A stretch of 64,000 nucleotides of DNA. It comes from Macrostomum lignano (Eukaryota). The DNA is taken from contig NIVC01002479.1 of NCBI GenBank assembly GCA_002269645.1, forward strand, positions 62,001 through 126,000, in the 5' to 3' direction. Positions 49,150-53,846 of this stretch are shown here, one piece after another (position 1 is the first letter of the stretch; each line of letters starts with the position of its first letter). The notes beneath the pieces are model-generated. The model worked only from the letters and a program-made list of their open reading frames with translations. It was not told where the DNA came from and made no database searches. Both the position numbers and the translations under genes were made by a program.

Positions 49150-49514
49150 CGCTCAACGCACACGGTTGTCAAGGTGATTACCGACGTATAAAACGCAGCG
49201 GTCATGATGAAGCGCAGCAGCTTGCAGGCGGCCAGCCCGAGGAACCAGTGCTGCGAGGCCAACCGGAAGCCGATTTCCGCCAGAGCCAGCAGCAACGACA
49301 GCAGGTCGGAGCAGGCCAGGTTGAGGATGTACAAATTCGTCACCGAGGCGCGCATCCTCTTGTCCATCAGGATGGTGACGATGACCAGGCTGTTGCCGAA
49401 CAGTCCCACCAGCATGATGGCCAGGTACAGCGCCGAGACCAGGACGGTGGCGCCAAGAGATGTGGCGCCCACGCTGACAGGCGCGCTGCCATTGAGAACC
49501 GGAGTGGCGTTCAT
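49150..49514 (-). CDS. Neuropeptide GPCR, exon 1 (N-terminus, TM1-TM3)
   Basis: MNATPVLNGS (N-glycosylation sequons), GLFGNSLVI, NLYILNLACSDLL, CKLLRF...TTVCVE-R. Donor GAGCG|GTGAGT is phase 2 and completes ERY with exon 2. The three exons total 1329 nt = 442 aa plus stop. Confidence 0.92.
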
Positions 49515-49929
49515 TGTTTCTCGACGCTTGACTTAGAGGAAGCTGCTGCGTTTCAGGGTTCGATGAGGTCCGCTGGGGCGCTGGACACAGCTGCTGCAGC
49601 TTAGCTTTTATTTTAAGCCCGGTGGGGAGCTGCGAGAGAGACGGCCTGGGCTGGCTGGGATTGGTCCGGCTGCCCTGCCGGCTGTCATGACCTGCAGAGA
49701 CAATTCGAAGGTGTCCTCGACAAGCAGCTAACAAAAATCGATAATCATTGTCGCAAGGCCTTTTCAGAAGGCAAATATCTACACACCTGACTCAGCGGGG
49801 GATGTCATGGCAACAGGCAGCGTCCGAAACACTGTAGACAAATTGAGCCGACATGCCCAGAATCTCAACCGGAAGGGTCACGTGTCACACTATCTGACCG
49901 ATCCGTCTTGAAAGTCTTCAATATTGTCT

Positions 49930-51045
49930 ATGGCAAGGAATGCGACCACGCAGCCAAGTCTTGAATTTATCGAATTATCGTCTCTTTGACTGCGAAACCG
50001 AAATTATAGAATTGGGCAAGAACTTTGTCAACACCCCTTACACTGGACGAGCTTCAATCCCCAACATCAACTTGGACAAGCGGCGCTCTCACGGGGACTT
50101 TTTTGAAATCCTAGACAAGATCAGTATTCCAAGAATCATACACACAACATGCCAAGCCTTCAGGAGCAGGAGAGAATGGCACTGAAGACTCTTCGAGGCA
50201 ACAGCAGCATCGTCATTAAACCTGCCGACAAGGGCAGCAATATAGTCATCATGAAGCTCTCCAACAGGAACCTTCTACCAACCTCTTGACTTCGCAATGA
50301 GCACCCAGACCAGTGCCATTATCAAAACCATTTTTCAATACTCGCAATTTTTTATCTCGTCTCGGACTGCAGCTCGGAAAGTTACGTGAGTGCCAAATTT
50401 ATCGATCTCTTCCTACAAGACTCCTTCATCCGAGACACGGACCCCTTTCCAAGCTGCTGTCAATCATTTGATTTTTGACTAAGACGAAAATGCCTTTCTG
50501 GTTACAATGGATGTTGAATCCCTGTACTCCAATAATCCTACTGAGAAGGGGACGGACGTCATTAGAGATGCCTTTCAAAAAGTTCCGCAAACCTCAAGGC
50601 CACGTAACCATCTACTTGTGCACCTGGACATTAACTTCAACGAAAAAGATTTTGTTTTTCAACGACGCGCGCTATCTTCAAGTCAAAGGCACATGCATGG
50701 GAAAGGCCTTTGCGCCATCCTACGCCAACATCTTTATGTCTGCCTAGGAATCCGTCCCACTCACGGTGCAATACAGCAGAGAGAAGCTTCACTTCCTGGA
50801 CTGCCGGGTCAGTCTGATTGACGAAGTCAATAACACAAAGAGACTTTCGTGCTCGATCTACTTCAAACCCACCGATTCACGCCAGCTCTTGCATCCGGAG
50901 TGATTTCACCCAAAGCAAACATTCAAGGTTATGTTGAAAGCTCAGTTCCTCCGTTACGCTCGTACGCTCGCCGTTGCACGTTTAAAGACGACTTTGATGA
51001 AGCCAGCAGAAGCCTAACAAGCATCCTGAAGATTCAAAGTTGCTC
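49930..51045 (+). mobile_element. Decayed Penelope-like element reverse transcriptase fragment
   Basis: Frameshifted motifs in RT order: LRGNSSIVIKPADKGSNIVIM, FLVTMDVESLYSN, YLQVKGTCMGKAFAPSYANIFM, LHFLDC, YFKPTDS. No YxDD motif was seen. Ends in (ATCT)n. Confidence 0.8.
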
Positions 51046-51056
51046 TGATTGCTTAA

Positions 51057-51682
51057 TAGATCTATCTATCTATCTATCTATCTATCTATCTATCTATCTA
51101 TCTATCTATCTATCTATCTATCTATCTATCTATCTATCTATCTATCTATCTATCTATCTATCTATCTATCTATCTATCTATCTATCTATCTATCTATCTA
51201 TCTATCTATCTATCTATCTATCTATCTATCTATCTATCTATCTATCTATCTATCTATCTATCTATCTATCTATCTATCTATCTATCTATCTATCTATCTA
51301 TCTATCTATCTATCTATCTATCTATCTATCTATCTATCTATCTATCTACCTACCTATCTATCTATCTATCTATCTATCTATCTATCTATCTATCTATCTA
51401 TCTATCTATCTATCTATCTATCTATCTATCTATCTATCTATCTATCTATCTATCTATCTATCTATCTATCTATCTATCTATCTATCTATCTATCTATCTA
51501 TCTATCTATCTATCTATCTATCTATCTATCTATCTATCTATCTATCTATCTATCTATCTATCTATCTATCTATCTATCTATCTATCTATCTATCTATCTA
51601 TCTATCTATCTATCTATCTATCTATCTATCTATCTATCTATCTATCTATCTATCTATCTATCTATCTATCTATCTATCTATC
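51057..51682. repeat. (ATCT)n microsatellite
   Basis: About 155 near-perfect units. Confidence 0.98.
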
Positions 51683-52483
51683 CATCCGTTTTTATAAAGA
51701 AAACTTCACATTCTAGCTTTCTTAAGCCTCTGGAAAAACTCTAATCAAGTCAAGTGAGTTTAGACCTGTCAGCTTAAAATTGTAAGGTCAAAGTTCGCGA
51801 TGAGATGCAGCTTTCAATCGGATTTGTCAATCAGACTCATTCGTCTTTTCAGTCAAATTTCTCTAATGAATTGTCATCATTAGACAATGCTAATCAGCTT
51901 TGTAGGCAGAAAAGAAAACATTTTGCGATTCTTGTTGACTTTTGTTCGATTTTTAACGCACTTGGAACAGCATCAGAAGCACACTACTGCTAGTGGCAGC
52001 AACAGTTTCTGACTGCTTTTTCTGTAGTTTTTACTTTTCTAGGTTTTCCGGGGACCGCATCCAGATTACAGCATCTAAATTTGTTCGTGGTCGAGCAGGT
52101 GGTCGAGAGCGGCCTGCTTGACAACGCCGAGAATGTATCAGAGTGTACAGTGGCCCTGACTTTCAAATCGTCCGGCATGTACACACTCTGCGCCTTGGGG
52201 GTTGTGCCCAAGTTGTGGCTAACTTCTTATTCAGCAAATTCTACTGGGCCTTGAGTCCATTACTACACCGCCCACGAAAGACTTCGGGCATCGGTTGCCT
52301 GCAGTGTCTCTGATGACTAATTCCGACAGCCAATGGCAGGCGCTCAAACCTGAGCAATATGAAGGAAAATTCAATTTAAAAAAATCCCAATTTCTGGGGG
52401 ATCATTGCAGCGGCGGCGCTCTCAGCTTTTTTGTAAAGCATAGAAAAAAACTATTAAGACTATCAACCGTTAAGCGTCGCACA

Positions 52484-53846
52484 ATGCATTCTGCGTCACT
52501 AACGTTAATTGCTCTCCTGACCGTGTCCTGCTGCCTGCTAGGTGAGCATTTTCTAATTATAGTCGCTAATTAATGCACTAATTAAGTTTTTCTTAATAAA
52601 ACTATTTGTATCTATTTCAGAAGTATTGTCTGAGACAAGTTACAATACGAATGGTAAGCCGCAGCTGCAGTCATAATTTCTTTCGTTTCACGTACCCTTT
52701 TTGTATTGATCGTTTGGCTTACAGATGAGGAACCTCACCTTGGGAGACAGGCAGATGGACACCATTGGTACAGGTATTGCTGGTCTGCGAATTGTCTAGT
52801 TACATTTCATGCCTATGCCCAACCTGTGCCCAACTTGTACTCAATCTATACTCAACCTACACTCAACCTGTGCTCAACCTATGCTCAACCTGTGCTCAAC
52901 CTATACTCAGCATACTCATGCTCAACCTATGCTTAAACTGTGCTCAACCTATGCTAAACCTATGCTAAACCTATGCTCAACCTGTGCTCAACCTATACTT
53001 AACCTATGCTCAACCTGTGCTCAACCTGTGCTCAACCTATACTCAACCTACACTCAACCTATGCTCAACCTGTGCTCAACCTGTGCTCAACCTGTGCTCA
53101 ACCTGTGCTCAACCTATACTCAACCTACACTCAACCTATGCTCAACCTGTGCTCAACCTGTGCTCAACCTGTGCTCAACCTATACTCAGCATACTCATGC
53201 TCAACCTATGCTTAACCTGTGCTCAACCTATGCTAAACCTATGCTAAACCTATGCTCAACCTGTGCTCAACCTATACTTAACCTATGCTCAACCTGTGCT
53301 CAACCTGTGCTCAACCTATACTCAACCTACACTCAACCTATGCTCAACCTGTGCTCAACCTGTGCTCAACCTGTGCTCAACCTGTGCTCAACCTATACTC
53401 AACCTACACTCAACCTATGCTCAACCTGTGCTCAACCTGTGCTCAACCTGTGCTCAACCTATACTCAGCATACTCATGCTCAACCTATGCTTAACCTGTG
53501 CTCAACCTATGCTAAACCTATGCTCAACCTGTGCTCAACCTGTGCTCAACCTGTGCTCAACCTATACTCAGCATACTCATGCTCAACCTATGCTTAACCT
53601 GTGCTCAACCTGTGCTCAACCTATGCTAAACCTATGCTCAACCTGTGCTCAACCTATACTCAACCTATGCTCAACCTGTGCTCAACCTATACTCAACCTA
53701 TGCTCAACCTATACTCAACTTGTGCTCAACCTAGCAGGCAGTCGCCGAGCGTCGGTCCCATGACCTGGGAGGACTTCGTACTGGATCAGCTAATGATGGA
53801 GCGCCAGTATCCAGCAGCCAAGAAGCGGTTCGTGACGGACTGGTAG
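52484..53846 (+). CDS. Small secreted prohormone-like peptide, 82 aa, 4 exons (52484-52541, 52621-52653, 52725-52773, 53738-53846)
   Basis: All junctions are canonical and in phase (CTAG|GTGAGC, tttcag|AA, ATG|GTAAGC, ttacag|AT, CAG|GTATTG, tagcag|G). Product: MHSASLTLIALLTVSCCLLEVLSETSYNTNDEEPHLGRQADGHHWYRQSPSVGPMTWEDFVLDQLMMERQYPAAKKRFVTDW*, with a signal peptide and a KKR site. Confidence 0.75.
52815..53733. repeat. Intronic minisatellite, 11-bp unit CTCAACCT(G/A)T(G/A) (peptide gene intron 3)
   Basis: Tandem copies with higher-order blocks; the last unit ends in the acceptor. Confidence 0.95.

What the first reader, a model, noticed from the sequence alone, without database searches (positions are those of the whole stretch)
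49150..53846. Neuropeptide-type GPCR and an unknown secreted peptide gene are head-to-head: candidate linked receptor-ligand pair
Seen: the GPCR ATG at 49514 (-) and the prohormone-like ATG at 52484 (+) are 3 kb apart and divergent, so they share upstream DNA. Established: the receptor has class A peptide-receptor motifs (GN, LAxxD, ERY, NPxxY), and the peptide gene has a signal peptide with basic cleavage sites. Inference: co-regulation and possibly an autocrine or cognate signalling module. Ligand and receptor genes are rarely adjacent in animals, so this could be a new system.
Basis: inference. Interest (0 to 1): 0.75.

Follow-up and report, generated by a model that had tools for sequence, protein, structure and literature searches.

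The report
Peptide GPCR beside orphan secreted gene
A real, intact peptide-type receptor gene and a small, species-restricted gene for a probably secreted protein sit back-to-back 3 kb apart in what is very likely a Macrostomum flatworm genome, but nothing beyond that adjacency suggests that one encodes the other's ligand.

Summary
A class A GPCR starts at 49514 (-) and a small signal-peptide-like gene starts at 52484 (+), 2,970 bp apart and divergent.

The GPCR is an intact 3-exon, 442-aa gene (49514-49150, 38334-37966, 36832-36238). It belongs to the protostome "neuropeptide receptor 15-like" clade (33-39% identity, shared motifs, shared intron after ER|Y). I found no reported ligand for this clade.

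Exons 1-3 of the small gene are clearly not chance: it is the only such spliced chain in the window, with none in 30 shuffles. Its last exon, its start codon and its status as a prohormone are uncertain. Intron 3 has weak splice sites. An in-frame upstream ATG lies at 52313. Its "cleavage sites" occur in 11-21% of random sequences. It has no homologue among 1.84 billion representative proteins, except a Macrostomum lignano gene model that shares exon 4 and then splices elsewhere.

The cognate-pair inference has no support. At least 21% of the intergenic DNA is repeat. Four orthologous receptor loci show no peptide-like neighbour within 10 kb. A receptor clade this old is unlikely to have a lineage-restricted ligand.

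Verdict: ordinary neighbouring genes, testable but low priority.

The parts
49150..49514 (-). GPCR exon 1. Covers the ATG, an N-terminus with two N-glycosylation sequons, TM1-TM3 and the E-R of ERY. The donor is GCG|GTGAGT.
   Evidence: An in-frame stop lies 21 nt upstream of the ATG.
38335..49149 (-). GPCR intron 1, 10.8 kb. Much of it is tandem arrays, including 146 copies of a 23-bp unit at 45874-49095.
37966..38334 (-). GPCR exon 2. Covers Y of ERY, TM4, ECL2 with the conserved Cys, TM5 and the start of ICL3.
36238..36832 (-). GPCR exon 3. Covers a Q-rich ICL3, TM6 (FVCYLS in place of CWxP), TM7 (NPLLY), a Gly-rich C-tail and the stop. AATAAA lies 108 nt downstream.
49515..52483 (.). Spacer between the two start codons, 2,969 bp.
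49940..51040 (+). Degenerate ORF fragments in three frames with stops and frameshifts. They look like a decayed mobile-element ORF, but this is not statistically confirmed.
   Evidence: No Pfam or PDB match.
51060..51686 (.). (ATCT)n microsatellite, about 157 copies.
52313..52315 (+). In-frame upstream ATG with no stop before 52484. If transcribed, it gives a 140-aa protein in which the hydrophobic segment is internal.
52484..52541 (+). Small gene exon 1, encoding MHSASLTLIALLTVSCCLL. The donor is TAG|GTGAGC (99.7th percentile).
52621..52653 (+). Small gene exon 2, encoding EVLSETSYNTN. The acceptor is at the 98.7th percentile and the donor at the 99.1st.
52725..52773 (+). Small gene exon 3, encoding DEEPHLGRQADGHHWY. 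The donor is CAG|GTATTG (90th percentile).
52812..53733 (.). An 11-bp-period satellite that fills intron 3 of the small gene.
53735..53846 (+). Small gene exon 4, with a tandem TAG/CAG acceptor at 53735 or 53738. It encodes (S)RQSPSVGPMTWEDFVLDQLMMERQYPAAKKRFVTDW*. GC is 60% here against 32% just downstream.
   Evidence: Positions 53760-53828 are identical to the first 23 aa of the M. lignano model P0125.
53828..53833 (+). Weak GT (GCG|GTTCGT, score -1.85) at the point where P0125 departs from the window. It is a possible alternative donor.
53905..53932 (+). Two ATTAAA poly(A)-signal variants, 59 and 81 nt after the TAG.

Best explanation
These are two independent neighbouring genes in a satellite-rich flatworm genome, probably Macrostomum lignano or a close relative.

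Gene 1 is an intact three-exon class A peptide-type GPCR of the protostome 'neuropeptide receptor 15-like' clade. I infer that it signals like other peptide GPCRs, through ligand binding in the extracellular or TM pocket and G-protein coupling via ERY/NPxxY. Its TM6 is unusual: Tyr replaces the toggle Trp, as in the Lingula and Aplysia members of its clade, and, uniquely among the ten sequences compared, Pro6.50 is absent.

Gene 2 is a lineage-restricted four-exon gene for a protein of about 83 aa with a signal-peptide-like N-terminus. It is most likely a small secreted or membrane-anchored protein of unknown role.

The head-to-head arrangement is real. It is best explained as ordinary gene-order chance, not as a ligand-receptor module.

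Shown here: the gene structures, the family assignment and the lack of homologues. Inferred: secretion, the absence of a functional link and the species.
For: GPCR.
- The exon model is in frame with consensus splice sites.
- Full-length 7tm_1 match, E=5e-47.
- The best named relatives are NPR-15(-like) proteins of Tachypleus, Dermacentor, Amblyomma, Lingula and Aplysia, at 33-39% identity over 96-98% of the core.
- Clade-specific motifs are shared (MRxSVTNL, VCVERYVAIVHPxRAHL, VKMLxAxVxVYF).
- The intron after ER|Y is conserved in all four orthologue genes.
- A profile of the clade hits only peptide GPCRs in the PDB, with no single closest family.

Small gene.
- It is the unique strong spliced chain in the window, with 0 in 30 shuffles.
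- Exons are GC-richer than introns 1-2 and the 3' flank.
- ATTAAA signals follow the stop.
- Exon 4 is read in the same frame by an independent M. lignano gene model.

Against a functional link.
- The cleavage motifs are at chance frequency.
- There are no homologues and no Pfam match.
- The spacer is repeat-laden.
- There is no peptide-like neighbour at four orthologous loci.
- A second divergent pair of unrelated genes lies in the same window.
Against: - Absence of evidence is not refutation. Neuropeptide precursors diverge so fast that homologues and synteny can be undetectable.
- Only 10 kb upstream of each orthologue could be read, and those genomes are large.
- No flatworm genome could be examined for synteny.
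- No expression data are available.
- The protein does have the gross layout of a preprohormone: a hydrophobic start, Gly-Arg, and Lys-Lys-Arg near the C-terminus.
- The receptor clade has no reported ligand that I could find, so no known ligand excludes this one.
Confidence: 0.72

Rival explanations
1. The small gene encodes the cognate, possibly autocrine, peptide ligand of the adjacent GPCR, and the two are co-regulated from shared upstream DNA as a linked ligand-receptor module.
For: - The genes are divergent with 2,970 bp between their ATGs.
- The receptor is peptide-type and its clade has no ligand I could find.
- The small protein has a hydrophobic N-terminus plus HLGR and KKR motifs.
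Against: - The motifs are at chance level, 11-21%.
- There is no similarity to any peptide family.
- The receptor clade is old, spanning chelicerates, a brachiopod and a mollusc, whereas the peptide is lineage-restricted.
- No linked peptide-like gene lies near four orthologues.
- The spacer is about 21% microsatellite plus about 1.1 kb of decayed ORF fragments.
- The peptide immediately after the signal sequence would be strongly acidic (…NDEEPHL). From my own knowledge, that is atypical for GPCR agonists.
Confidence: 0.05
2. The small gene is mis-modelled. One possibility is that exon 4 does not end at the TAG but splices on from the GT at 53828 to distant exons of a charged intracellular protein, as in the M. 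lignano model A0A1I8FR89. The other is that translation starts at the upstream in-frame ATG at 52313. In either case the product is not a classical secreted preprohormone.
For: - P0125 is 100% identical to residues 56-78 and diverges exactly at a GT.
- UniRef names it a HABP4_PAI-RBP1 domain protein.
- The intron 3 splice sites are weak.
- Other acceptors downstream are stronger, for example 53995 with score 5.4.
- The in-frame ATG at 52313 has no stop before 52484.
Against: - The 53828 donor scores -1.85, well below every modelled donor of the two genes (0.89 to 7.28).
- The rest of P0125 is not in the 10 kb downstream.
- P0125 gets no significant Pfam hit here, so it looks like a poor model.
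- GC drops from 60% to 32% right after the TAG, and ATTAAA signals follow.
- A TTTAAAAA element at 52375, with CCAAT boxes at 52330 and 52387, would place the transcription start downstream of 52313. This is my inference.
Confidence: 0.18
3. The small gene is not a gene at all. It would be an ORF chain stitched together by eye from chance ATG, GT and AG sites in repeat-rich DNA.
For: - The exons are tiny: 58, 33 and 49 nt.
- There is no homologue for exons 1-3 anywhere.
- The exact 82-aa and 83-aa products are absent from a collection of 15 billion proteins.
Against: - Two consecutive short introns have donors and acceptors at the 97.6th-99.7th percentile and preserve the frame. This occurs once in the window and in 0 of 30 shuffles.
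- There is exon/intron GC contrast.
- Exon 4 is independently annotated as coding in the same frame.
Confidence: 0.05

Closest known systems
'Neuropeptide receptor 15(-like)' class A GPCRs of protostomes (NCBI names for the Tachypleus, Dermacentor, Amblyomma, Lingula and Aplysia proteins; named after C. elegans NPR-15)
   Same: - Best hits at 33-39% identity over the whole 7TM core.
- Shared TM2, TM3 and TM6 sequence signatures, and loss of the TM6 toggle Trp.
- Shared intron after ER|Y.
- C. elegans NPR-15 has been grouped with somatostatin/galanin-like receptors, with its function then unexplored (PMC3524798).
   Different: - Identity is low, and no phylogeny or reciprocal search was done, so orthologue versus paralogue is open.
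- This receptor alone lacks Pro6.50 (FVCYLS against F[IV][CS][YFL]SP).
- It has a long Q-rich ICL3 and a Gly-rich tail that the others lack.
Vertebrate peptide GPCRs with solved structures (CCK-A, SSTR2/5, GALR1, NMUR1, TRHR, NPFFR1, orexin, KISS1R)
   Same: - Full-length alignment, E=1e-28 for the single sequence and 1e-52 for the clade profile.
- Shared GN, LAxxD, E/DRY and NPxxY motifs and the TM3-ECL2 cysteines.
   Different: No family stands out: E-values lie within a few orders of magnitude across β- and γ-group receptors. No vertebrate orthologue, and therefore no ligand class, can be inferred.
Neuropeptide preprohormones
   Same: - Small size.
- Hydrophobic N-terminus with a phase-1 intron at its end.
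- Gly-Arg, a potential amidation and monobasic cleavage site with His at P4.
- Lys-Lys-Arg near the C-terminus.
   Different: - No match to any known peptide family or Pfam model.
- No repeated peptide copies.
- The motifs are at chance frequency.
- The region that would yield the first peptide is highly acidic.
- The start codon is ambiguous.
Genetically linked ligand-receptor loci (for example basidiomycete pheromone/receptor mating-type loci and the Brassica SCR/SRK S-locus; from my own knowledge)
   Same: A secreted-peptide gene lies next to a receptor gene.
   Different: Those loci are defined by recombination suppression, allelic co-variation of both partners and conserved linkage. None of these can be seen or tested here, and linkage is absent at four orthologous animal loci.

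Membership tests
Class A (rhodopsin-like) GPCR | Seven-TM domain matching Pfam 7tm_1 over its full length | tested here: met
   PF00001, E=5.1e-47, profile 1-260/260, residues 40-347
Class A (rhodopsin-like) GPCR | N1.50 (GN), D2.50 (LAxxD), E/DRY at the end of TM3, NPxxY in TM7, and the TM3-ECL2 cysteine pair | tested here: met
   G40 N41, L66 A67 D70, E121 R122 Y123, N343 P344 Y347, C97 and C176. All except E121 and Y123 fall in invariant columns of the alignment; E121 is conservatively Asp in two sequences and Y123 is nearly invariant.
Class A (rhodopsin-like) GPCR | CWxP motif in TM6 (toggle Trp6.48 and Pro6.50) | tested here: not met
   TM6 reads VYFVCYLSKL. Trp is also absent in the NPR-15-like relatives (CYSP, SFSP, SLSP), but all nine compared sequences keep the Pro. 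This is a deviation within the family, not grounds for exclusion, because the motif is frequent but not universal (my knowledge).
NPR-15-like protostome receptor clade | Closest sequence relatives are clade members, with clade-specific motifs | tested here: met
   The top five hits all belong to the clade (four named NPR-15(-like); the unnamed fifth, P0007, clusters with an Amblyomma NPR-15-like protein), at 33-39% identity. The next hits drop to E=1e-22. Motifs are shared.
NPR-15-like protostome receptor clade | Shared gene structure (intron position) | tested here: met
   The intron directly after ER of ERY is present in the window gene and in the Tachypleus, Dermacentor, Lingula and Aplysia genes. 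This intron position may be more widespread among peptide GPCRs, so it is supportive only.
NPR-15-like protostome receptor clade | Monophyly in a phylogeny, or reciprocal best hit to C. elegans NPR-15 | not tested
Neuropeptide preprohormone | Cleavable N-terminal signal peptide | tested here: inconclusive
   Residues 4-19 have mean Kyte-Doolittle hydropathy above 2, and small residues allow cleavage around residues 16-25. No dedicated predictor was available, the n-region has no Lys or Arg, and the in-frame upstream ATG at 52313 could make the segment internal.
Neuropeptide preprohormone | Convertase and amidation sites flanking bioactive peptides, beyond chance | tested here: not met
   G-R and K-K-R are present, but both motif types occur together in 11% (own composition) to 21% (generic composition) of random 58-mers.
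Neuropeptide preprohormone | Homology of the mature peptide to a known peptide family, or conservation across species | tested here: not met
   No Pfam hit, no word-index hit, and only two marginal hits among 1.84 billion representatives. One is the same locus in M. lignano and the other is unrelated. No literature match to the peptide strings.
Neuropeptide preprohormone | Expression in neurons or endocrine cells and detection of processed peptides | not testable with these tools
   This needs in situ hybridisation, single-cell data and peptidomics.
Co-regulated bidirectional gene pair or linked ligand-receptor module | Head-to-head orientation | tested here: met
   The ATGs at 49514 (-) and 52484 (+) are divergent.
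Co-regulated bidirectional gene pair or linked ligand-receptor module | Short shared promoter (conventionally under about 1 kb between transcription starts; my knowledge) | tested here: not met
   There are 2,969 bp between the ATGs, including a 627-bp (ATCT)n array and about 1.1 kb of decayed ORF fragments. The transcription starts are unknown.
Co-regulated bidirectional gene pair or linked ligand-receptor module | Linkage conserved in other species | tested here: inconclusive
   No called small gene and no tblastn match (best E=0.3) lies within 10 kb of the receptor orthologues in Tachypleus, Dermacentor, Lingula and Aplysia. The Lingula upstream neighbour is a Neuralized-domain gene. These species are very distant, and no flatworm genome was accessible.
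Co-regulated bidirectional gene pair or linked ligand-receptor module | Receptor activated by the encoded peptide | not testable with these tools
   This needs a heterologous expression assay.

The most novel reading that the evidence does not exclude
A lineage-specific secreted peptide gene has arisen, or been retained, next to an orphan NPR-15-like receptor in Macrostomum and is its cognate ligand, with both genes driven from the same upstream region. That would be a genetically linked peptide-GPCR pair in an animal, and it would deorphanise a protostome-wide receptor clade.
Probability: 0.04. Interest if true: 0.65.

Novelty: new member of a known kind. Interest (0 to 1): 0.2.

Why it matters
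If the pair were cognate, it would give a ligand to a receptor clade that is conserved from flatworms to chelicerates and molluscs and for which I found no reported ligand. It would also be a rare animal example of physically linked ligand and receptor genes.

As the evidence stands, the practical value is smaller.
- It gives a clean gene model for an NPR-15-like GPCR that I could not find in the public protein collections searched. The receptor has an unusual TM6 lacking both Trp6.48 and Pro6.50.
- It gives a candidate unannotated small secreted-protein gene in a regeneration model flatworm.

Both are easy to test in Macrostomum lignano, which I recall supports RNAi and in situ hybridisation.

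Tried and rejected
- The first GPCR search with the full protein returned only 4 weak hits, probably because the poly-Q and poly-G words saturated the candidate list. Repeating it with the 7TM core worked.
- The word-index search for the small protein found nothing. The exhaustive HMMER search gave two hits at E=1.2e-4. P0124 is a 640-aa repeat protein sharing only a short helical motif, judged irrelevant. P0125 is the informative M. lignano model.
- I looked for the remainder of P0125 in the window and found nothing. A locus look-up for P0125 found nothing on record.
- I tried to confirm the intergenic ORF fragments as a reverse transcriptase. There was no Pfam hit at E<=10 of that kind and no PDB hit, so this remains only an impression.
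- Literature searches for the peptide strings, for Macrostomum neuropeptide or GPCR catalogues and for an NPR-15 ligand turned up nothing that names this peptide or a ligand for the clade.
- Exact look-ups of window proteins found none in the collection. The species assignment therefore rests on the 23-residue exact match to A0A1I8FR89 alone.
- I considered the intron-3-retained reading (…HHWYRYCWSANCLVTF…), whose C-x4-C ring is superficially reminiscent of cyclic peptides. I rejected it as a lead because the ORF then runs on into the satellite.
- I considered docking the peptide onto the receptor by structure prediction. The tool is single-chain only, and a fusion construct would not be accepted or reliable.

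
Full report
WHAT IS THERE

The window is eukaryotic and extraordinarily rich in tandem arrays.

On the minus strand an ORF at 49146..49514 begins MNATPVLNGS and ends …TVCVER. It is followed immediately by GTGAGT. Two further minus-strand ORFs continue it with consensus acceptors. Exon 2 (38334..37966) starts with the Y of ERY. Exon 3 (36832..36238) carries TM6, TM7 and the stop. The spliced CDS is 1,329 nt and gives 442 aa in frame. Pfam 7tm_1 matches end to end (E=5e-47). The start codon is preceded by an in-frame stop 21 nt upstream, and AATAAA lies 108 nt after the stop. 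Intron 1 is 10.8 kb and much of it is satellite arrays.

On the plus strand, the ATG at 52484 opens MHSASLTLIALLTVSCCLL. With GT-AG introns (52542-52620, 52654-52724, 52774-53734/7) it yields an 83-aa or 82-aa product: …EVLSETSYNTNDEEPHLGRQADGHHWY(S)RQSPSVGPMTWEDFVLDQLMMERQYPAAKKRFVTDW*. The two start codons are 2,970 bp apart and divergent.

IS THE SMALL GENE MORE THAN CHANCE?

I scored every GT and AG in the window with a generic metazoan splice matrix.
- Donors 1 and 2 are at the 99.7th and 99.1st percentile.
- Acceptors 1 and 2 are at the 98.7th and 97.6th percentile.
- These values are comparable to the GPCR's own sites.

I then searched both strands for an ATG, a hydrophobic N-terminus and two short strong frame-preserving introns. 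The search returned exactly one hit, at 52484, and none in 30 composition-matched shuffles. The thresholds were taken from the candidate, so the test is post hoc. Exons are GC-richer than introns 1-2. GC falls from 60% in exon 4 to 32% right after the TAG, and two ATTAAA signals follow. Exons 1-3 therefore belong to a real spliced gene.

The 3' end and the start are less certain.
- Intron 3 is filled by an 11-bp satellite and has mediocre sites: donor at the 90th percentile, acceptor at the 81st-89th.
- Other downstream acceptors exist, one of them much stronger.
- An in-frame ATG at 52313, with no intervening stop, would turn the "signal peptide" into an internal hydrophobic segment if it were transcribed.

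WHAT THE DATABASES SAY ABOUT THE SMALL PROTEIN

There is no Pfam family and no word-index homologue. An exhaustive HMMER pass over 1.84 billion representative proteins gave only two marginal hits.

One of them, P0125, is 100% identical to residues 56-78 (MTWEDFVLDQLMMERQYPAAKKR) at its own N-terminus. It then continues for 164 unrelated, highly charged residues. It is UniRef A0A1I8FR89 from Macrostomum lignano, named a HABP4_PAI-RBP1 domain protein. This has three consequences.
- It identifies the probable source organism. This fits the satellite load and the fact that the GPCR's best relatives are only 33-39% identical.
- It shows that exon 4 has independently been read as coding in this frame.
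- It raises a rival model in which exon 4 splices onward from a GT at 53828.

That rival model is weak. The donor (GCG|GTTCGT) scores -1.85. The remainder of P0125 is not in the 10 kb downstream. P0125 itself gets no significant Pfam hit here. It may be a chimeric or fragmentary model, but I cannot exclude it.

The "basic cleavage sites" are not evidence. G[KR] together with a dibasic site occurs in 11% of shuffles of the mature region and in 21% of generic random 58-mers. No paper in the library contains the peptide strings.

WHAT THE GPCR IS

The closest solved structures are all peptide receptors (CCK-A, SSTR5, GALR1, orexin and others), with nearly equal scores. After removing the low-complexity loops, the protein search returned a clear top group:
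- "neuropeptide receptor 15(-like)" of Tachypleus, Dermacentor and Amblyomma at 38-39% identity
- Lingula at 35%
- Aplysia at 33%
- then a drop to trissin-, galanin-, somatostatin-, GPR39- and CCR6-named proteins.

The alignment shows clade signatures: MRxSVTNL, GWxLGLxxC, VCVERYVAIVHPxRAHL and VKMLxAxVxVYF. The whole clade lacks the TM6 toggle Trp. The window's receptor additionally lacks Pro6.50 (FVCYLS), which all nine compared sequences keep. The intron immediately after ER of ERY is shared with all four orthologue genes examined. A profile of the clade still matches many vertebrate peptide-receptor families about equally (NMUR1, TRHR, NPFFR1, CCK-A, GALR1, SSTR2), so no ligand class can be inferred.

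C. elegans NPR-15 has been grouped with somatostatin/galanin-like receptors and described as functionally unexplored (PMC3524798). A later study gives it an immune and behavioural role without naming a ligand (PMC10942643). It is not named in the main text of the system-wide C. elegans deorphanisation paper. I therefore treat the clade as orphan, with the caveat that supplementary tables were not available.

IS THERE A FUNCTIONAL LINK?

Adjacency is the only positive evidence. Six points count against reading more into it.
- The spacer is not a compact bidirectional promoter. 627 bp are (ATCT)n, and about 1.1 kb hold stop-ridden, frameshifted ORF fragments. These look like a decayed mobile element to me but could not be confirmed.
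- The receptor clade predates flatworms, whereas the peptide has no detectable relative anywhere.
- Within 10 kb upstream and downstream of the receptor orthologues in Tachypleus, Dermacentor, Lingula and Aplysia there is no called small gene and no tblastn similarity (best E=0.3). Lingula's upstream neighbour is a Neuralized-domain gene.
- Divergent neighbours are commonplace here. A ClC chloride-channel gene (-), with a probable first coding exon whose ATG is at 27630, and an NTF2-domain ORF (+) at 31611 are likewise head-to-head about 4 kb apart.
- The peptide nearest the signal sequence would be strongly acidic.
- From general knowledge, about a quarter of neighbouring gene pairs are divergent, and small secreted proteins are a sizeable share of animal genes. 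Some GPCR-secreted-protein adjacencies are therefore expected by chance in a genome with hundreds of GPCRs. This last point is inference and was not computed.

None of this disproves the hypothesis. Neuropeptide precursors evolve fast, the compared species are very distant, and no flatworm genome or expression data could be reached.

VERDICT

The best explanation is two unrelated neighbours: a new member of a known receptor clade, and a lineage-restricted small gene of unknown role (confidence about 0.7). The main rival is that the small gene is mis-modelled (about 0.18). A true cognate pair is at about 0.04-0.05. Interest is low (0.2). The deorphanisation experiment is simple, and if it were positive it would matter for a whole protostome receptor clade.

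Noticed in passing
window 36000-57000 (also 56800-64000): Extreme density of tandem arrays with many different units. Examples: a 40-bp unit x27 at 36842-37916; a 23-bp unit x146 at 45874-49095; (ATCT)157 at 51060-51686; an 11-bp unit x82 at 52812-53733; a 30-bp unit x39 at 54155-55334; and purine-rich arrays from about 56.8 kb onward. Several fill introns of the two genes.
   Followed up: partly
window 36610-36680 (GPCR TM6): The receptor's TM6 reads VYFVCYLSKL. Tyr replaces the toggle Trp6.48, and Pro6.50 is missing, although all nine aligned relatives keep it. This is unusual for an otherwise intact class A receptor and could affect activation or folding.
   Followed up: partly
window 53760-53833: UniRef A0A1I8FR89 (Macrostomum lignano, 'HABP4_PAI-RBP1 domain-containing protein', 187 aa) starts with 23 residues identical to exon 4 of the small gene. 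It diverges at a weak GT, and the rest is absent from the window. It is either an alternative or chimeric transcript, or a faulty gene model.
   Followed up: partly
window 49940-51040 (+): Stop-ridden, frameshifted ORF fragments (…IVIKPADKGSNIVIM…, …YLQVKGTCMGKAFAPSYANIFM…). They remind me of a reverse-transcriptase-bearing retroelement, but no Pfam or PDB match supports this.
   Followed up: partly
window 20500-27630 (-): A multi-exon ClC-type chloride channel gene (Voltage_CLC, E=9e-52 for the 23980-25182 exon). That ORF runs on into a 48-bp-period array that translates as repeated [16 protein letters not shown].
   Followed up: partly
window 31611-32033 (+): An NTF2-domain ORF (PF02136, E=2e-25) in a very AT-rich stretch (about 30-32% GC). 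Its first exon and start codon were not resolved. It is divergent to the ClC gene at about 4 kb.
   Followed up: partly
window 12856-16095 (+): A single uninterrupted 1,079-aa ORF. By eye it has an EF-hand-like N-terminal region and many WD40-like repeats. The exact sequence is not in the 15-billion-protein collection.
   Followed up: no
window 1-5160 (+): A coiled-coil protein ORF built of near-identical units of about 357 bp (…LTSRLAEVNQLLASKDEALTKSSDRIQE…). It runs in from the window's left edge, and neighbouring units are interrupted by frameshifts.
   Followed up: no
window 52774-52936 (+): If intron 3 of the small gene is retained, the ORF continues …HHWYRYCWSANCLVTFHAY… with a C-x4-C pair before running on into the satellite. 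This is probably meaningless, but it is an alternative C-terminus.
   Followed up: partly
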